Origin: Oculina patagonica
Taxonomy: Eukaryota
NCBI RefSeq assembly: GCF_052425735.1
Contig: NC_135760.1
Location: 12,152,001-12,216,000, forward strand
Length of the DNA: 64,000 bases
Reading direction: 5' to 3'
Positions 26,817-37,999 of this stretch are shown piece by piece. Numbering within the stretch: the first letter of the stretch is position 1; each line of letters opens with the position of its first letter. The translations under genes were made by a program, and so were the position numbers. The notes below the pieces were generated by a model that was given only the letters and a program-made list of their open reading frames with translations, was not told the DNA's origin and made no database searches.

Positions 26817-27138
26817 TAAAGGTTGAAAGAAATGCTTCTCTTTTCCATACAAAACCACATTCACTTACGTATGGCGTTAGAATGTGGTGAATTATAGCAA
26901 TCATGCAACATTCGCGGTGATTTAGAGGATTCTGGATCAATGTAGTCAGGATGTAGTTATATTTAGCATTATACAGTCAGCGTACTTGTTCCGTCAAGTG
27001 CTACAGAAAACGGGAAAGTTGGTGCAGTACTGCAGTCAATTATTTTAAAGTTTAAGATTACAAAAGGCAACTTATCAAGTTCAGTAGCCTGAATTTCGGC
27101 CGTCTTTTCTAGTCGCTAAGTCGTTGTGGGAAAGCAGC

Positions 27139-27479
27139 TACCTTATTGTTACTTATTTTCGCGGGACTTAATTTTCGCGATTTCAAAAAAAACGCGAAAT
27201 CAAATACCCGCGAAAATTTGTTTCAAAAGTTTTCTATTGTATTTGTTATGTTAATTTCGTATTTTTGGCCAAATCGCGAAAATAAAGTCCCGCGAAATAT
27301 GCCCGTTCTTTTTTCGCGAAATAAAGTTCCCGCAAAAATAAAGCCTGGTTCTCATATGATCGTCGCTGTCGCTTCAAAAAGTTTGCTTCCTCCAATCACC
27401 TCAGACTTCGCAAACGACAGAAGCGACAGAGACGATCGGGGCGATCATATGAGAACCAGCCTTAAGTAACAATAAGGTA
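27139..27479. mobile_element. MITE family A copy 2, right TIR interrupted by a nested MITE
   Basis: taccttattgttacttattttcgcg ... cgcaaaaaTAA[insert]TAAgtaacaataaggta. Confidence 0.85.
27342..27462. mobile_element. Nested Harbinger-type MITE (121 bp), TAA TSD
   Basis: agcctggttctcatatgatcg ... cgatcatatgagaaccagcct. Confidence 0.85.
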
Positions 27480-27934
27480 GAGAGAGGACGGCTGAAAATG
27501 AGGCTACAATTTAGTTACTGCCTTTTTTTCTATTAACTGTAGAAAATTATAGAAAAAGTTGTGTTTGATGCGGGTCGGTTTGTTTATTTTCACCAAAACG
27601 GCATGTGTGTTTTAAGCTCTCTCGGGCTGTGAAAGTTGTTGCCATCAAGTAATCAAAGCGCGTAGCAGATGTGTTTTTTGGTAATTTATAAAGTTTTTAA
27701 CGTATAATATATACCACAATGTTAGAAAATAAGTGTTATATTCGAAGAATGATGTAAAAGAATTTTAATAAAAGAAATACCAGGAAACCACTGTATAGAC
27801 ACAACAACAAAACGCGGAAAAGCTACTCGTGTAGAGAAAAGTTGAGTTGTACTGAAAATTCAAAATTGTTTACGCGAGAAAATCATCATGCTGGCCAAAT
27901 CCTTTCCTGGGAGGCTCTTAGGGGCCTGCGAACT

Positions 27935-28044
27935 GAACTCTTCAAGCGCTGAAGGTACGATCCCGCGAGTGCCGAAGCTTCGCTCGCCGACTCGCGCCTT
28001 CGAATTCGGCACTCGTGGGATCGTCTTCGTCGCTCAAAGAGTTC
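27935..28044. repeat. GC-rich imperfect hairpin (~110 bp)
   Basis: gaactctt..acgatcccgcgagtgccgaa / ttcggcactcgtgggatcgt..aagagttc. Confidence 0.75.
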
Positions 28045-28372
28045 AATTAGCATTCCCGACTCCCCGGAGGTGACTTGAAAAATATTTGTACGGGAAGGCT
28101 CCGCGCCAAAGTCTTAACCCTTACCATTCTCGTTCCCAGAGCCTCCGTTTCTTTTGGTCACGTGGTCGGCGAAACGAAGGGCTCTGGTAACACTGACTAC
28201 CGGATGTCGTAAAATCCACGACATCCGGTAGCGCATGCCCACTGCATAAATGTTCGTCTGCGTCTGCTCAGTAAAAGAAAGGGGAAGGCTGGGGCCATTC
28301 TCGACCCCAGAGCTATTGTCTTTTCCACGTGACTGACGGCGACAAAAGCTCTGGGAAACTCCACGCAAGCGT

Positions 28373-28967
28373 CAATCTCGTCCCCAGAGGCCGCGATCCT
28401 TCTGGTCTGCGCCAGGGATCGGGACCTCTGGGCTATCTAAAAAGCCGCTGAAACAATGAAAACACTTCTGATTGTCGATCTGTAACGCGCCAATTGAACG
28501 TCGTCGGGATGGTTGTCCTGGCCCCTGGGGAGTTGAAAGTTGTGCTTTATGCAAATCACAGATTGTGCACCCAATCGTAACATGTGCTGTTTTTGATGTA
28601 TTTCTGTTTGAGACGACATCAACAGTCTCAGAGCATTTTTTTCACTTAAATAAGCATGTTTAATGTATAACGATGTTTAACAGTAGAGAATGATCCCAAA
28701 ACAGCATTAATTATAATTACGTGACACGACCTGAATTTGCATAAAACCGCAGACATGTCTAGTCTCCTGTGAATGAATTAACGGTCGAATGACTTTTTAA
28801 TTATTCAGTGGAACGTGGAGCGTGCGCAAAAGAGTCTTGCAATCTCTGGCGCACGCGCACAATCACACCGGAACCAGGATTTCCTGGTTCCGGTTTGGAT
28901 TCGACCAGAGCCGTTGAGTTTCCCGGCCCGCTGGTCAAGGGAAACGCAGGCTCTGGGGACGAGATTG
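28373..28967 (+). mobile_element. Inner element copy A (595 bp), 9-bp TSD cgcaagcgt
   Basis: cgcaagcgt|caatctcgtccccagag ... ctctggggacgagattg|cgcaagcgt. Confidence 0.9.
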
Positions 28968-29064
28968 CGCAAGCGTAGCCAAAATCTGGCTACGATGACT
29001 CTATTGCGCACGCTCCACATTCCAGAGACAAAAAACGGCTCTTGCAACGATTACTAGCAGTAAC

Positions 29065-29666
29065 CAATCTCGTCCCCAGAGCCTGCGTTTCCCTTGACCA
29101 GTGGGCCGGAAAAACTCAACGGCTCTGGTCGAATCCAAACCGGAACCAGGAAATCCTGGTTCCGGTGTGATTGTGCGCGTGCGCCAGAGAGTGCAAGGCT
29201 CTTTTGCGCACGTTCCACTGAATAATTAAAAAGTCATTTAACCGTTAATTCATTCACAGGAGACTAGACATGTCTGCGGTTTTATGCAAATTCAGGTTGT
29301 GTCACGCAATTGTAATTAATGCTGTTTTGGGATCATTCTCTACTGTTAAACATCGTTATACATTATAAACATGCTTATTTAAGTGAAAAAGAATTGCTCT
29401 GAGACTGTTGATGTCGTCTCCAAACAGAAATACATCCAAAAACTGCACATGTTACGATTGCGTGCACAATCTGTGATTTGCATAAAGCACAGACTTTCAA
29501 TTCCCCAGGGGCCAGGACAACCATCCCGACGCACGTTCAAATTTTGGCGCGTTACAGATCGACCAATCAGAAGTGTTTTCATTGTTTCAGCAGCTTTTTA
29601 GAATAGCCCAGAGGTCACGATCCCTGGCGCAGACCAGAAGGATCGCGGCCTCTGGGGACGAGATTG
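29065..29666 (-). mobile_element. Inner element copy B (602 bp), inverted relative to A, 9-bp TSD agcagtaac
   Basis: agcagtaac|caatctcgtccccagag ... ctctggggacgagattg|agcagtaac. The interior is the reverse complement of copy A with scattered differences. Confidence 0.9.
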
Positions 29667-31414
29667 AGCAGTAACATTTTGTTGAAGAATTTCAGCAAAA
29701 ATTAATGTTACACCTTTAGCTCGTGTAAAGCCCCAGTAAAGTCAAAATCAGCAAGGTAGTTCTTCTAAATGTATATTTAATTTTAAAATGTTCAACAACT
29801 GAATAATTAAAAAAGTCATTCGACCGTTACATTCATTCACCAGAGACTAGACATGTCTGCGGTTTTATGCAAATTCAGGTCGTGTCACGTAGTTGTAAAT
29901 AGCTCTGTTCTTGGACGATTCTCTTTTGTTAAACGTCGTTATACATTAAACATGCTTGTTTGAGTGAAAAAGAATTGCTCAGAAATACATCCAAAAACAG
30001 CACATATTGCGATTGCGTGCACAATCTTTGATTTGCATAAAGCACAGACATTCAATTCCCTAGGGGCCAGGACAACCATCCCGACGCACGTTCAAATTTT
30101 GGCGCGTTACAGATCGACCAATCAGAGGTGTTTTCATTGTTTTAACGAACTTCAAATGAGAATAGGCTCTGTTCCAGGGTTGCCCAGAGCTCTTCTCGCC
30201 GTCCGTCATGCGCAAAAGAGAAGAGCTCTGGGGTCGAGAATGGGCTGGGGCTGACTAACACGAGAAGAAAACGAATTTTGAAAGAAAATACGAGATTTGA
30301 GTTTAGCGTTCGAAAGAGCTGTACATCAATCCTCGCTACAACTGTCGGAGGACATCAAGAAACAAGAAATGGAACAGGAAGCCGCCCTGCCTGCTGTAGT
30401 CGTTAAGTAGAACGACTGTCCTTGTGTTTTGCCCGCTGGTTTTGGCAATTCAAGTCGTTGATAACTTAACACAATTCGATTCGTTTGGAACTCATTGAAT
30501 TGCATGGCTGATAGATGTGTTCTTGTTGTGTCGTCTCTACACGCAATATTATCTGAAGGCAAAGTTAGAATCCAGAGGAATTGGAGTTATAGTCGCGCTG
30601 TTATAGTGTTTTTAACATGGAGTCGAGGATATCATCAGCCGATAACATTCCGACGGTTGATGATACTGTGAAATTTATTTATGGCCATGCGGAGGTATTG
30701 CAGAAAATTCAGAACTAAAAAGGCCGCTAATCGACGAGGTATCATTCTATTGAGCAGCGGTAAGAAATATCACATTGAATTTCAAAATCTTCATGTAATT
30801 CATGAACTTCATTTAGTGACCCTTTAGTGTGTATATCTTGTATAAGCTAAGTTGATAGTGCAAATGTTTGCAATATTTTTAATGCAATAAAAAGTACAAC
30901 CGAGTCACACCTTACAAGTGATGTATTTGTCATTCGTTCATAAACAAAGGTCTGCTTCGTGAATACGTTATTCCAACAAACTCCCAGTGTTATTCGGTCT
31001 TTTTCCTGTAACATTTTCAAACTTGCCCGCTTCATCTTGAATTGTTTCGATGACCGGAAGTATAACTAAAATTGCGTAGAAGCGTTTCGTTTTTTACCTA
31101 ATTACGCATGCAGTTTTTATCAGCCAATCCAAAAAATCATATTTTTTACCGTTACCAGGGCCACTACGTCATGTCATTTAAAAAAATACGCGTGGCCCTG
31201 GGGAAGAGGATGAACCCTTACCCCATCTCCGGGATCCTGTTACTAGTTAGCATCGCCACTCAGTAGATGACAGCAGTTTTTTAAGCCCACAGTTAACCGT
31301 AAAATGCACCCTTCTAAAGATTTACCGGTACGTAGAAAACTAACCTGTGTAGCTGGCAGAAAAACCGCCAGCTACACAGGCTAGTAGAAAACCAAAAATG
31401 CTGTTTGCATCAAG

Positions 31415-31848
31415 CCCGGGGGGGGGGGGGGGGGGGGTACTCAAAAAAGTCTTATACGGGGAGGCTCCGCCCCAAGTTCTAACCCCTTACCCTTTTATAT
31501 ACCATTTTTGACAGAAATTGTACCCCTTTCGTATGCCTTTTACTGAAAAAAGGTACCCCTTTCATATACCTAAATGACGTGACATAGCCTTAGAACAGGA
31601 CGTTTTCTTGTCATTTTTATGTAGCGCTTAATAAATTAAAATAATACAGCCATAAAGTGCGTCTGTTCGAAATATTTTAATTACTGGCCTTTTAAAAAAC
31701 CTAAATGACGGATTTTCATACCCTTTCATATACCTAAACTTGTGAAATCGCTACCCTTTTATATACCTGAAGCCTGAAAAAGGTACCCCTTTCGGGCGGA
31801 GCCTCCCCGTATAGGCCGATATATGGAGTACCCCCCCCCCGGGGGGGG
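31415..31848. mobile_element. Non-autonomous element with CCCGGG(G)n ends, 8-bp TSD gcatcaag
   Basis: gcatcaag|cccggggg..tactc..tatacggggaggctccgccc ... gggcggagcctccccgtata..gagtacccc..cggg..|gcatcaag. A fragment of the same family is at ~28088-28124. Confidence 0.8.
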
Positions 31849-33163
31849 GCATCAAGGCATAAATTCAGACGGAAAACCACGCACATCAATCAGGTAAACC
31901 TTCGATATATGAAAACTCGCATGACTTTTTCAGATCCTTTGATATACTAAGCTAACTGAAAAAGCAAAGTTACGGCATTTGAAGAGAAATTGCACAGAGT
32001 AAAGTCCATAACATTTGTGATAGTTTACAAAAGTCCAGCGCACAGTAGGCTGCATTGCAGATAAACTTAACCTTGAGTATTGATAACAGAAAGAATGGAA
32101 GATAATTAGCACTACTGAACCTGCACAGTGCAAATTTGAAAAACGTGAGTCTTTTGATTTGACTTTGACATGTTGATTGTGCTGCGACTAATCAGATGGT
32201 TGATAAAACCACATGGTTAACGACCATACCAGGCTTAGCAGATTACTCATTTTCCCTTGTGACACAACACTCCACGAATCTCCTTCGCTTTTCTAATTTA
32301 CATTATAACAGTATTATACTAACTTGATACCGGTCCATTGGTCAATAATATTTAGCTTTCTTCAAGTTTAGAATTACAGAAACAAGGTAACCCGAAATGA
32401 ATCACTTTCTTCTGAGATACCATTAAAGTTAATTAAAGCACCATACAAAGTTTTTGTGTAAATATCTTACATCTTTTTACATAGATGTACAGTGAGAATG
32501 GACTCTGTTACCACAACAGTAATTTACTGCGTGCACATACTCTAATGTAGAACATAACAGAACAGAAACACAAACACGTCCAGGCATCAGTGTTGGTAGG
32601 GTAGTCATGAAGAGGAACAGGTGACTCCTAGCTCAATGTTACCGGAAAATTCACAAAAATACTGCGTTGCTTCAGATGGAATTGCACACATACAACACTA
32701 TCGCAAAGAGTTTGTGTAAAAAGTGCTCTGTCACAAACTGATAACATTGTTAGTTCCTAAGAAACAGCACCAGAGGAAAAGGTGCAATGCAGATGAGAGC
32801 TGACCCGCACTGATGAGATATTAATTTGAGGTAATCAGTCCACTGCTGTTTGCTGTAGAGAAGTCACATGTCTTTTAACTGCAGGGCTGGGTCAGGTGAG
32901 GCTTTAAGCAAAGCCCTTTTTACTCTGAGTGCCAAAGGGTTTTTTTTCCTGATTTTTCTTGCATTATCACAAAAATAAAAATAAAACCTCTGGCACCCAG
33001 GGTAAGCCATATTATGAGAGCTTGATATTCTGCAGTGTCACTCTCCAACTGTAATCCCACTTCATGACTGTCTGCTCCTGCTGCATGGCAGTGTTTGCCA
33101 TACTCTGGGCAACATTCTTGGTCTTGAATCATAAAATAAGCTAAAAAATCTCCTAATAAATAA

Positions 33164-36100: not shown

Positions 36101-37999
36101 TCCAATGAAAGTGCCATGTGCTGAGCAAGGAGAAATCAAAAACAAAAATATGTAACTGTCTCTGTTAACACTTTGGAACAAACACATGTTATTGTGATGT
36201 TTTGTGAGTTCATCAGTGATGGAGGAGTTTGGAAACTCCAGCACGTTCTCACAGTTTAATCCACAAAGATGTTTGTATAACATTGTAAAATTCTTTTATT
36301 TATTCTTGAGGGCAAACCATCTTTTTATTAACCTAAATTAACTTATTATATTTTATATATTATAATAATATATTAAATGTAATCATTACACTGAACATGT
36401 AGTGCTTAAATGATTGATCCTGACCATATGCATGTTGACATCAACTCCATTATCTTTTAAGGTTGATTTTTGGCTTCCATCAAACCAGTGTTAGTCAATT
36501 TTTTTAATGTCATATGTTAAACATTGTAAGAATGTTCAAAGAAGATAATAACAATAAAACAATATTAAACAATAATTCCATGGCAATGAATGGATAACTG
36601 TTAGGGTAAGAAATTAGATATACTTACTACTCTTGAGGTCAATCAGAAACGTTCGGTTGAGGTGTTTATGGAAAACCAGTGCAGCATGTACACGGGAACA
36701 TGATGTGTGTTCCAGACTGAAATCACAAGTTTCCTTGTTTCTTCCAAATAAGTAATATGACTTCTGATCAATGATAAGTTTCTATATCAGAAGAAAAGAA
36801 TATTCTTTAATGTAATATCTGCCTCTTGCTTCAGTTTCTAATTTATGGTTTCCCGGCTTCCCGGTTTCGCAGTTAAAGAGGGTCTGTTATACGGGGTTGT
36901 ACAGTCTGCAGACCGCCATACTTTGATCATCCTAGACCACAAATTTCTTATATTTTCTCCCGAAGACTAAGACTGCCAGATTAAAGAGTGTGACCGCTGA
37001 CTGCCACTCAAAATCGGCTCAATCTGCCAGACAGCCAGAGTATAAAAGACCCTCATTAAAACTTGCCAAGGTTAAAACATATGATTTGAGGAGAATGCTT
37101 GTTTACAACTTTTAAATAAGCAACCCCCCTCTCACCACCCTACCCAGGTCCCAAATAAATATCTCTCTTGAGTTATACATCGTACCCCCATACATTAGAA
37201 AAAAGTGCCAAGCGTATATGGCATACATGTTATTTTTTCTTTCCTTAACTTTTACATGACTCTGAGTAATTTTTATAAGATCACTTATTGTGAACAGTAT
37301 TCTGTTTGAGGAGCAATAACATCAAGCTGCACTCACGGCAAGATGCCTAAACCTCACCCAGTGTTGCTATAGCACTAAATGTAGTTGTGCAAACCAGCTC
37401 AAATGTAAGCACAGTCTGTTCCAGTGCAATTAATTAATAATACATGTCAGACCAGATGCAAAGGCATTTGATCATACGGCAAATGATCAGCCCCTTTATT
37501 TGCCCCATTAAATATAAATGAATAAGCGGTCTCTATGGCAACTGTGAAAATGTACTCACAGTGTGGAGGACAAAAGACAGAGACGCTGGGAACGAGGTTG
37601 TTCTGCCCCCCACCCCTGTAGGGTGAGTACATTTTGAAACCTTTAGCAAAAACTTTATAATGTTGATATAAAGATGTAAAATTCCTCAGTCTTTGACCTA
37701 CTACCCAGCCTCAGAAAGACCAAAAATTACTTAACGTGTGCTTTTTGTTTTAAGTGAGAATGTTAGCGTGATCTATTTTGTTCAAAATGCTATTTGTTTT
37801 GATCAAGTTTACCTCAACTAGATTTGTCTGTTTCATGACATCTAAATGAAGTCCTTGTGGCGGTTTACCTGCCCTGTAAAAATAAACATTCCTTGTTGAA
37901 CTTAAACACCAAATAATGGACCAGGGAATCTATAAAACGTTACCAGGTGGGGACATCAAAAGGTGGATTGTTCGCGGCAGAAGTCTTGTTAGCCGCCAT
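33164..37999 (-). CDS. PPP1R8: Nuclear inhibitor of protein phosphatase 1 (NIPP1), FHA domain, ~364 aa, 7 exons
   Basis: Exons: 37999-37944, 37873-37813, 36781-36628, 36120-35882, 35297-35141, 34510-34443, 33523-33164 (1095 nt). Motifs FDVPTWAGKPP, YYLFGRN..SCSRVHAALV..STHGTF, LTEFNTAHNKRIS, GKFRNMVQT and the C-terminus KKKYAKEAWPGKKPTPSLLI* match NIPP1. Confidence 0.97.
37300..37429 (-). ncRNA. SCARNA1: Box H/ACA scaRNA (SCARNA1-like) in PPP1R8 intron 2; predicted guide for U2 snRNA pseudouridylation at U37 and U89 (human numbering)
   Basis: Hairpin-H(ATAGCA, 37370-37365)-hairpin-ACA(37305-37303)+3 nt layout, with a UGAG CAB-like motif in both apical regions. 5' pocket GAACAGA/CTACATTT pairs with U2 UCUGUUC/AAGUGUAG. 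3' pocket GTTTAG/TATTG pairs with U2 UUAAAU/CAAUA. Confidence 0.82.

What the first reader, a model, noticed from the sequence alone, without database searches (positions are those of the whole stretch)
28116..31221. Three-level Russian-doll nest of four related 9-bp-TSD transposons, suggesting self-targeting
Seen: outer 28125-31212 (TSD aacccttac) contains middle 28296-30242 (TSD ggctggggc), which contains A 28373-28967 (TSD cgcaagcgt) and B 29065-29666 (TSD agcagtaac). All share the end consensus CA(T/A)TCTCGN(C/T)CCCAG and have perfect but different 9-bp duplications, so these are four independent insertions. The middle element also carries a ~350-bp core (about 29798-30145) homologous to the interior of A and B. 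Established: 9-bp TSDs are typical of Mutator-like elements. Inference: three insertions into relatives within ~1 kb suggest targeting of own-family sequence (for example transposase bound to subterminal sites) or local hopping.
Basis: partly seen in the sequence, partly recalled or inferred. Interest (0 to 1): 0.72.

Follow-up and report, generated by a model that had tools for sequence, protein, structure and literature searches.

The report
Self-nesting coral jumping-gene family
Four small non-coding jumping genes of one family really do sit inside each other in this coral genome. Genome-wide, the family lands in or beside its own relatives about 20-30 times more often than chance predicts, a behaviour already known from plant and insect mini-transposons.

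Summary
Outer (28125-31212), middle (28296-30242), A (28373-28967) and B (29065-29666) each have family ends and a perfect but different 9-bp target duplication.

- **Independent insertions.** Uninterrupted paralogues of the outer type span the middle's insertion site. Copies of the middle type lack A or B.
- **Lineage-specific.** Three other coral taxa carry a precise empty site for the whole 3.1-kb nest.
- **The family.** It is non-coding, with at least 1,617 strict termini in 529 Mb and mostly 9-bp (sometimes 10-bp) duplications. It is recently active: two 1.1-kb copies match at a rounded 100% identity.
- **Nesting is not chance.** Outside this locus, 6 of 76 sampled copies lie in or against a relative. 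The family is estimated at no more than 0.3% of the genome.
- **A hot spot.** The middle's 9-bp target in the outer type was hit again on contig C2 by a different guest, and on C13 (one junction only). About 109 copies are unoccupied.
- **Other corals.** Coral-like metagenome contigs show the same habit.

Self-family targeting is supported, but the mechanism is inferred. No autonomous element was found, so "Mutator-like" rests on duplication length alone. The scan had already noted this stretch (s1-306477), without follow-up.

The parts
28125..31212 (+). Outer element. It is 3,088 bp in all; its own DNA is 28125-28295 plus 30252-31212, about 1.13 kb. It belongs to the outer type: non-coding, with unlike 5' and 3' subterminal regions.
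   Evidence: It has family ends and a perfect 9-bp duplication. It is 93% identical to an uninterrupted copy, L028:1984-3086, and 90-97% identical to L036:1534-2511. The genome holds 206 candidate copies. The whole element is missing at the orthologous site in runs X3, X15 and X16.
28116..28124 (.). Left copy of the outer element's target duplication, aacccttac. The right copy is at 31213-31221.
   Evidence: Read directly. Empty-site contigs join 28115 to 31213 and keep a single copy.
28296..30242 (-). Middle element. It is 1,947 bp in all and 732 bp without A and B. Its ends are of the middle type (CATTCTCGACCCCAGAG) and its core is related to A and B. Strand is given relative to A.
   Evidence: The inverted ends are 65 nt long and 86% complementary (I6). 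The duplication ggctggggc (28287-28295 and 30243-30251) is perfect. The insertion site is contiguous in outer-type paralogues.
28373..28967 (+). Element A. It is 595 bp, non-coding and MITE-like, with two unlike ends: End1 resembles the L031 type and End2 resembles the L032 type.
   Evidence: Its duplication cgcaagcgt is perfect. Full-length paralogues are 93-97% identical. Reads include middle-type sequence running straight through the site without A (loose end at 28968). The filled junction is unique in the genome.
29065..29666 (-). Element B. It is 602 bp, of the same type as A, in the opposite orientation.
   Evidence: Its duplication agcagtaac is perfect. It is 94% identical to A. Middle-type copies lacking B occur at multi-copy depth in all four runs (joint 29062 to 29688).
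29798..30145 (-). Core of the middle element, homologous to the interior of A and B.
   Evidence: Direct repeats D1, D2 and D8. BLAST identity is 84-85% over about 370 bp.
28066..28124 (.). Fragment resembling the end of a different, extremely abundant repeat. The outer element is inserted in it.
   Evidence: It is 75% identical to 31432-31494 (D5), which is the terminal region of the 442-bp repeat at 31407-31848.

Best explanation
**What is there (shown).** The locus holds four successive, independent cut-and-paste insertions of one family of non-coding inverted-repeat elements that make 9-bp target duplications. An outer-type copy landed first, in a fragment of an unrelated repeat. A middle-type copy landed 162 bp inside its 5' end. 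Two A-type copies then landed 68 and 156 bp inside the middle's 5' end. The nest is specific to this lineage.

**Family behaviour (shown).** The family inserts into or directly beside its own relatives far more often than its share of the genome predicts. One 9-bp site in the outer type has been hit repeatedly.

**Mechanism (inferred).** All ends share the motif CCCAGAG and an inverted partner CTCTGG about 40 nt further in. The family's transposase presumably binds these motifs. Transposase bound to resident copies, or the chromatin state they create, would then draw incoming transposition complexes. Integration would fall just beyond the bound end region. In the cases I could map, guest sites cluster at about 50-77 bp and about 135-191 bp from a host end.

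**Superfamily.** It is most likely Mutator-like, from the 9-10-bp duplications. The autonomous partner was not found.
For: **Structure and duplications:**

**Family size and age.**
- There are 1,617 strict termini, against 0 for the reversed control pattern.
- Of 22 A-type copies with two recognisable ends, 17 have a perfect 9-bp duplication, 3 have 10 bp and 2 have none.
- Two 1.1-kb outer-type copies on C12 and C14 match at a rounded 100% identity (bit scores 1990 and 1964), which points to very recent activity.

**Unoccupied versions of each insertion site.**
- Outer-type paralogues are contiguous over the middle's site.
- Reads show middle-type copies lacking A or lacking B.
- Single-copy contigs in three other organisms join 28115 to 31213, skipping 3,097 bp (the 3,088-bp element plus one 9-bp copy), with 195-199 matching letters on the shorter side.

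**Other nests.**
- L028: outer type inside A type, duplication gcgcaaaag.
- L036: both an L031-type and an outer-type copy inside one A-type copy.
- L034: an 856-bp relative inside an A-type copy, duplication ccagagccc.
- L007 and L037: copies abutting a relative.

**Rate.** 6 of 76 sampled copies are nested or abutting. At a family share of 0.3% the binomial P is about 1e-7; even at 1% it is about 1e-4.

**Hot spot.**
- Guest end followed by GGCTGGGGC gives three exact hits, with three different guest end types, on C3, C2 and C13; the control gives 0.
- The C2 case also shows the left junction with 26 of 26 bases of outer-type host context. That implies an 823-bp guest with the same duplication.
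- 109 copies have the site unoccupied.

**Independent sample.** Among 107 coral-like metagenome contigs there are clear nests in L140, L090 and L077 and a probable one in L093. Neighbours lie within 70 bp in L130, L118, L176 and L087.

**Shared end layout:**
Against: - No transposase was tied to these ends, so transposase binding and tethering are pure inference.
- The copy lists come from searches that score only the best 40 candidates, so the 8% rate may be biased.
- The one positionally unbiased list (100 termini on C1) yields only two abutting or adjacent pairs among 85 elements. It also shows 5-20-kb clustering that fits local hopping or regional preference.
- The family's genome share (0.3% or less) is my estimate from candidate counts, not a full annotation.
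- The other two sites I tested are not recurrent: the A/middle junction and A-type positions 428-436.
- Ordinary insertion sites show no significant enrichment of an end-like motif: 1 of 22.
- The distance classes were defined after seeing the data.
- The C13 hot-spot case has only its right junction.
- The C35, C12 and C1 cases rest on coordinates alone.
Confidence: 0.6

Rival explanations
1. Local hopping and regional preference only. Cut-and-paste elements reinsert near their donor or in favoured chromatin. Copies therefore pile up locally, and nests are a by-product with no recognition of family DNA.
For: - Among 85 elements on C1, gaps under 20 kb number 13 against 4.0 expected (P about 3e-4). 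One 82-kb stretch holds 9 termini.
- Several pairs of copies from different subfamilies lie 30-50 kb apart (coordinates).
- Self-insertions accompany mobilisation of artificial P-element constructs in flies: 3 of 39 mapped events (PMC4744444).
Against: - The same 9-bp site in outer-type copies was hit on different chromosomes by different guest types.
- Guests and hosts usually belong to different subfamilies.
- A is closer to copies on other chromosomes (97%) than to B (94%), which lies 97 bp away.
- Clustering at 5-20 kb is only about threefold. Enrichment within 300 bp is about thirtyfold.
Confidence: 0.15
2. Intrinsic target preference met by accident. The transposase prefers a DNA sequence or shape that happens to occur in family end regions, for example a G+C-rich stretch beside an A+T-rich one, or an extended motif around GGCTGGGGC. 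Resident copies play no active part.
For: - Exact-site recurrence is what a strong extended target motif would give.
- Family end regions have 50-65% G+C, against about 38% for the window. Several guest sites lie where G+C drops.
- The 49-bp context of ordinary sites is mildly G+C-rich, about 0.43 on average.
Against: - All three guest junctions carrying GGCTGGGGC lie in outer-type hosts. This 9-mer should occur thousands of times by chance in a genome of this size (my estimate, not counted).
- Guests enter three host types with unrelated local sequences at similar distances from an end: 156, 159 and 162 bp.
- No consensus is visible among about 30 duplications.
Confidence: 0.2
3. Survivorship. 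Insertions are random, but those in genes or regulatory DNA are removed by selection. Surviving copies are therefore concentrated in repeats, including relatives.
For: - The outer element itself sits in a fragment of an unrelated abundant repeat.
- Nested insertions are common in repeat-rich genomes (PMC3903597).
Against: - If repeats were, say, 40% of the genome (an illustrative figure), relatives would make up under 1% of repeat DNA, yet they host 4-8% of sampled copies.
- Survivorship cannot produce reuse of the same 9-bp site.
- Family termini also lie next to intronless receptor genes, so genic neighbourhoods are tolerated.
Confidence: 0.04
4. Assembly artefact. The nest is a chimaera of collapsed repeat copies.
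For: The interior is made of multi-copy sequence. The short-read contigs listed do not span the inner junctions.
Against: - Four perfect, different 9-bp duplications placed exactly at full-length element ends are not what mis-joins produce.
- Contigs of run X1 run from unique flank into both outer ends with no mismatch. They reach only 25-26 letters inside, below the tool's 31-letter rule for bridging.
- Similar nests occur at other loci and in independent metagenome assemblies.
Confidence: 0.01

Closest known systems
MITE multimers and self-insertions in rice, maize and mosquitoes (Jiang & Wessler 2001, Plant Cell 13:2553, as summarised in PMC5172404)
   Same: Small non-coding inverted-repeat elements are found nested in or adjacent to other such elements far more often than expected. 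Some families (Castaway, Gaijin) show frequent self-insertion. The nests arise from independent insertions, each with its own target duplication.
   Different: - Here the host is a stony coral.
- The duplication is 9-10 bp, which points to a different transposase superfamily from Tourist and Stowaway elements (3-bp and 2-bp duplications, from my own knowledge).
- One exact site in a relative is reused.
- Guest sites cluster at set distances from host ends.
I could not read the original paper.
Mutator-like elements (MULEs), non-autonomous forms
   Same: They share 9-10-bp target duplications, inverted ends of 20-73 bp, many deletion derivatives and mosaic subfamilies, and insertions near genes.
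   Different: - No MULE-domain transposase was linked to these ends.
- Plant MULEs are reported to prefer low-copy or genic DNA and seldom to enter other repeats (PMC3903597).
- Each end here is a short hairpin-like unit, CCCAGAG then about 40 nt then CTCTGG.
Double Ds of maize (hAT superfamily) and P-element self-insertion in Drosophila
   Same: A cut-and-paste element is inserted into a copy of itself or a close relative. L034 is such a case, with the guest inverted. Self-insertions of P{lacW} were 3 of 39 mapped events (PMC4744444).
   Different: - Those cases are explained by very local reinsertion from the same or a sister copy.
- They make 8-bp duplications.
- Here guests and hosts are usually different subfamilies, and the recurrent site lies on different chromosomes.
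Target immunity of phage Mu, Tn7 and Tn3
   Same: Transposase-binding ends in the target DNA influence where new copies land.
   Different: The effect is opposite. Those elements avoid DNA that already carries their ends; this family is drawn to it. This comparison rests on my own knowledge.

Membership tests
Mutator (MULE) superfamily | Target-site duplication of 9-11 bp | tested here: met
   Of 22 A-type copies with two recognisable ends, 17 have a perfect 9-bp duplication, 3 have 10 bp and 2 have none. All four elements in the window, and L031, L032, L033, L028 and L036, have perfect 9-bp duplications.
Mutator (MULE) superfamily | Autonomous member with the same ends that encodes a MURA-type DDE transposase (Pfam MULE, PF10551) | tested here: inconclusive
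   - 18 MULE-domain hits in the genome. None has a family terminus within 1.5 kb (6 kb upstream for L056). None lies within about 100 kb of a listed outer-type or L031-type copy.
- The one MULE hit near an outer-type fragment is an unrelated single-copy relic.
- The long copies L031 (4.8 kb) and L032 (4.4 kb) have no Pfam domain.
Mutator (MULE) superfamily | Terminal inverted repeats, often long | tested here: met
   Perfect inverted ends of 45 bp (L031) and 73 bp (L032). The middle element has 65 nt at 86%. A and B have 23 nt.
MITE (miniature inverted-repeat transposable element) | Small size, no coding capacity, inverted ends with a target duplication, high and fairly uniform copy number | tested here: met
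   - A type is about 600 bp, with 956 candidates and more than 25 full-length copies at 93-97% identity.
- Micro forms of 54-134 bp exist.
- No ORF has a Pfam domain.
- The 4-5-kb L031 and L032 types are too long to be called MITEs, but they are non-autonomous relatives.
DUF6589/RING-finger cut-and-paste lineage with 9-bp duplication (earlier notes s1-294010 and s1-310659) | Element ends identical to this family's ends flanking a DUF6589-type (PF20231) gene | tested here: inconclusive
   54 PF20231 hits. None coincides with listed family copies. Of the three C1 hits, the two that lie within the listed stretch have no strict terminus within 180 kb. Their sequences could not be fetched.
Self-nesting MITE families (multimers in the sense of Jiang & Wessler) | Nesting in own or related elements above random expectation, arising from independent insertions | tested here: met
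   6 of 76 sampled copies, against an estimated share of 0.3% or less. The duplications are distinct. A site is reused. Independent metagenome contigs show the same habit. The rate comes from samples, not from a full annotation.

The most novel reading that the evidence does not exclude
Resident copies act as landing pads. Transposase bound to the end hairpins of a resident element tethers incoming complexes and sets integration at fixed distances from the end: about 50-77 bp, and about 135-190 bp, which is roughly one nucleosome. This would be a self-homing mode opposite to bacterial target immunity. It would also bring unlike ends together, from which chimaeric subfamilies such as the A type (End1 plus End2) could be mobilised.
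Probability: 0.25. Interest if true: 0.7.

Novelty: new member of a known kind. Interest (0 to 1): 0.5.

Why it matters
Where transposons choose to land shapes how harmful they are and how genomes grow.

- A family that prefers its own relatives limits damage to the host, because it lands in DNA that is already junk.
- The same habit builds composite elements and brings unlike ends together. That is a plausible route to the mosaic subfamilies seen here.
- The family is young and probably still active. It has an exact, repeatedly used target site, and related corals carry empty sites.
- It therefore offers a tractable animal system for testing whether a eukaryotic transposase is steered by copies already in the genome.
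- Practically, such nests will confuse repeat annotation and insertion genotyping in coral genomes.

Tried and rejected
**Search for the autonomous element.**
- MULE domain, PF10551: 18 hits, no family ends nearby.
- DUF6589, PF20231: 54 hits, no overlap with family copies.
- ORFs of the 4.8-kb and 4.4-kb copies: no Pfam domain.
- Larger L031-type loci L057 and L058: no long ORFs.
- A MULE relic 2.7 kb from an outer-type fragment: single-copy and unrelated.
- ORFs next to termini in metagenome contigs: receptor genes, a phosphatase, an FKBP/TPR protein and a retroelement, but no DNA transposase.

**Recurrence of other sites.** The A/middle junction and A-type positions 428-436 each occur once only.

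**Target preference for an end-like motif (GGCTCTGGGG).** Three duplications contain GCTCTGG (L011, L034, L036). Among 22 ordinary sites only 1 scores at least 8 of 10, against 0.55% of control windows. This is not significant and I dropped it as a general rule.

**Limits reached.**
The cases on C2, C13, C35, C12 and C1 are therefore known from coordinates and short pattern matches only.
- The original Jiang & Wessler paper is not held.
- The findings search by sequence was blank.
Full report
**1.

Reading 27900-31500 shows four elements whose ends begin CA(T/A)TCTCG..CCCAG. Each is flanked by a perfect 9-bp direct repeat, and the four repeats are all different:

| Element | Coordinates | Duplication |
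|---|---|---|
| Outer | 28125-31212 | aacccttac |
| Middle | 28296-30242 | ggctggggc |
| A | 28373-28967 | cgcaagcgt |
| B | 29065-29666 | agcagtaac |

- A script pairing every plus end with every minus end finds a 9-bp match only for these four pairings.
- The end consensus matches 7 times in the region, against 0.05 matches expected in the whole window.
- The eighth end, the outer's 3' end, is a diverged version.
- A and B are inverted relative to each other and 94% identical. The middle's core is 84-85% identical to their interior.
- The middle is therefore a relative with the same layout, not merely a carrier of a shared piece.

**2. The family**

The genome is 529 Mb, with 14 large contigs among its 1,951. 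Earlier notes of this scan call it the stony coral *Oculina patagonica*; I did not check this.

- The strict 17-base terminus occurs 1,617 times. The reversed control pattern occurs 0 times.
- Subfamilies share the terminal motif but differ inside:

| Subfamily | Size | Notes |
|---|---|---|
| A type | about 600 bp | 956 candidates; more than 25 full-length copies at 93-97% identity |
| Outer type | 1.1 kb, plus a 978-bp variant | 206 candidates |
| Middle type | 732 bp | |
| L031 type | 4.1-4.8 kb | 45-bp perfect ends |
| L032 type | 4.4 kb | 73-bp perfect ends |
| Micro forms | 54-134 bp | |

- Of 22 A-type copies with two recognisable ends, 17 have a perfect 9-bp duplication, 3 have 10 bp and 2 have none.
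- None of the long copies has a Pfam domain.
- Two outer-type copies on different chromosomes match at a rounded 100% identity over 1,103 bp (bit scores 1990 and 1964). The family was therefore active very recently.
- All ends share CCCAGAG followed, about 40 nt further in, by the inverted CTCTGG. This agrees with the scan's other note on this stretch.
- The A type has one end like the L031 type and the other like the L032 type. Another subfamily (L035, and the guest in L034) joins A-type ends to a middle-type core. The subfamilies are therefore mosaics.

**3. The four insertions are independent, and the nest is lineage-specific**

- Uninterrupted outer-type copies (L028:1984-3086 and L036:1534-2511) align straight across the point where the middle sits.
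- When public contigs were laid on 27000-32400, middle-type sequence was seen running through A's site without A (loose end at 28968).
- Middle-type copies without B appear at multi-copy depth in all four runs (joint 29062 to 29688).
- The filled A/middle junction occurs once in the genome.
- Three runs from three other organisms and studies (X3, X15, X16) each have one contig at single-copy depth that joins 28115 to 31213.
  - The contig skips 3,097 bp: the 3,088-bp element plus one 9-bp copy.
  - At least 195 letters match on the shorter side.
  - This is a precise empty site.
- The flanks of those contigs differ from the window by about 2.7%, so they come from related taxa or very divergent haplotypes.
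- Contigs of the best-matching run (X1) run from unique flank into both outer ends without a mismatch. They stop 25-26 letters inside, which is below the tool's 31-letter rule for bridging.
- Whether the nest was built in place or moved here as a unit cannot be told from these data.

**4. Is nesting more than chance?**

I estimate the family's share of the genome at 0.3% or less. This comes from candidate counts multiplied by element lengths, not from a full annotation.

Setting aside the window's own copies, the sampled copies that sit inside or against a relative are:

| Sample | Nested or abutting | Cases |
|---|---|---|
| Full-length A-type copies | 1 of 24 | L007 |
| Outer-type copies | 3 of 38 | L028, inside an A type, duplication gcgcaaaag; L036, inside an A type, duplication attattcag; C13, against another outer type |
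| L031-type copies | 2 of 14 | L036, inside the same A-type copy; C35, by coordinates only |
| Total | 6 of 76 | |

- The binomial P is about 1e-7 at a 0.3% share, and about 1e-4 even at 1%.
- L034 adds an 856-bp relative inserted into an A-type copy, with duplication ccagagccc.
- Caveat: these lists hold only the 40 best-scored candidates of each search.
- The one list ordered by position (100 termini on C1, about 85 elements) shows two pairs within 111 bp of each other (L037 and L032), where I estimate about 0.06 would be expected.
- That list also shows threefold clustering at 5-20 kb: 13 gaps against 4.0 expected. Regional clustering is therefore real, but much weaker than the close-range effect.

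**5. A reused target site**

- The pattern "family 3' end followed by GGCTGGGGC" has three exact hits and no control hits. The three have three different guest end types: this locus, C2:35993843 and C13:11163863.
- Adding 17 bases of outer-type context to the left of the duplication, plus the start of a guest, finds this locus and C2:35994668 with no mismatch.
- On C2, therefore, a different 823-bp relative sits in the same 9-bp site of another outer-type copy, with the same duplication.
- The C13 case has only its right junction, next to outer-type positions 163-298.
- About 109 outer-type copies carry the site unoccupied.
- If guests entered the roughly 1,100 positions of an outer-type host at random, two further hits on the same position would be expected at well below 1e-4 (my estimate).
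- Coordinates alone suggest more insertions just downstream:
  - an L031-type copy starting 14 bp after the site pattern on C35;
  - inserts of 4.0 kb on C12 and 8.2 kb on C1, between outer positions about 178 and 216-253.
  - I could not fetch these sequences.

**6. Where guests land in hosts**

Distances are from the nearest host end to the guest's duplication.

- About 50-77 bp: A in the middle; the L031 type in L036; the guest in L034.
- About 135-191 bp: the middle in the outer (162); B in the middle (156); the outer types in L036 (159) and L028 (135); C2 and C13 (162); C35 (about 182).

The classes were defined after seeing the data, so they are a lead and not a result.

**7. Independent sample**

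- A scan of public metagenome contigs for the terminus returned 120 stretches. Of these, 107 have coral-like composition, and their ends are 81-92% identical to the L032 type.
- Clear nests, with the start-to-start offset of the inner element from the host's left end:
  - L140: a 250-bp element about 167 bp in; the host has a perfect 9-bp duplication.
  - L090: 84 bp in.
  - L077: 135 bp in.
  - L093: probable, 256 bp in.
- Neighbours within 70 bp occur in L130, L118, L176 and L087.
- This gives a rate of 4-8%, in line with the focal genome.

**8. What kind of transposon?**

- The 9-10-bp duplications point to the Mutator superfamily (established knowledge).
- Earlier notes of this scan describe another 9-bp lineage in this genome, with a DUF6589/RING transposase.
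- Neither could be tied to these ends.
- The superfamily therefore remains an inference, which I put at about 60% Mutator-like.

**9. Mechanism and rivals**

- **Shown:** independent nested insertions, enrichment in relatives, and one reused site.
- **Inferred:** resident ends attract incoming complexes, through bound transposase or the chromatin they create.
- **Rival, intrinsic extended target motif:** it fits the reused site. It fits less well with similar distances in three host types that have unrelated local sequence.
- **Rival, local hopping:** it explains the kilobase-scale clustering, but not hits on the same site in unlinked copies.
- **Rival, survivorship:** it cannot produce exact-site reuse.
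- **Rival, mis-assembly:** it cannot produce the four perfect, different duplications.
- A general preference for an end-like target motif was tested and was not significant.

**10. Comparison with what is known**

- Nested and self-inserted MITEs are well documented in rice, maize and mosquitoes (PMC5172404).
- Self-insertion is known for P-element constructs (PMC4744444).
- Plant MULEs are reported to seldom enter other repeats (PMC3903597).
- This is a new animal example of a known behaviour, with an unusually clean reused site. I score it moderately.

Noticed in passing
window 31407-31848: A 442-bp inverted-repeat element with poly-G/poly-C tips and an apparent 8-bp duplication (gcatcaag). 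Its read depth is thousands of times the single-copy level. It is absent from the orthologous contigs of runs X3, X15 and X16 (joint 31406 to 31849), so it is another lineage-specific insertion, of a different and extremely abundant family.
   Followed up: partly
G000 C12:15488804-15489906 and C14:8748149-8749250: Two outer-type copies on different chromosomes match at a rounded 100% identity over 1,103 bp (bit scores 1990 and 1964). One of them sits inside an A-type copy. This implies very recent transposition, so an active transposase source should exist or have existed recently.
   Followed up: partly
G000 C12:14811261-14816180 and C1:37892093-37901221: Outer-type copies whose 5' part (up to about position 178) and 3' part (from about position 216 or 253) are separated by about 4.0 kb and 8.2 kb. 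They are either further nests at the hot region or candidate autonomous elements. They are known from coordinates only.
   Followed up: no
L062, L103 and L147 (metagenome contigs): Family termini lie 100-700 bp from intronless rhodopsin-type receptor genes in three separate coral-like contigs. This may reflect a preference for gene-proximal sites, or simply the abundance of such genes.
   Followed up: no
L033 (G000 C1:28596177-28597511): A 1,335-bp family member whose interior stays open for 190-335 codons in several frames on both strands. It is stop-poor sequence with only a small tandem repeat. The reason is unexplained.
   Followed up: partly
G000 C6:28389340-28390181 and C1328:4943-5558: Pairs of outer-type 5' regions in opposite orientation within 0.6-0.8 kb. 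This suggests fold-back derivatives, or head-to-head insertions.
   Followed up: no
L034 and L035 (G000 C10:17404411-17405982 and C5:9765364-9766222): A subfamily of about 860 bp joins A-type ends to a middle-type core. It carries a degenerate internal terminus (CATTATCGACCTCAGAG) 129 bp inside its End1-type end (both ends in the L034 structure). This may be the trace of an old nest that has since been copied as part of the element.
   Followed up: partly
window 37586-37600: A single terminus-like sequence (one mismatch) with no recognisable partner, about 160 bp from the guide-RNA gene noted earlier at 37300-37429.
   Followed up: no
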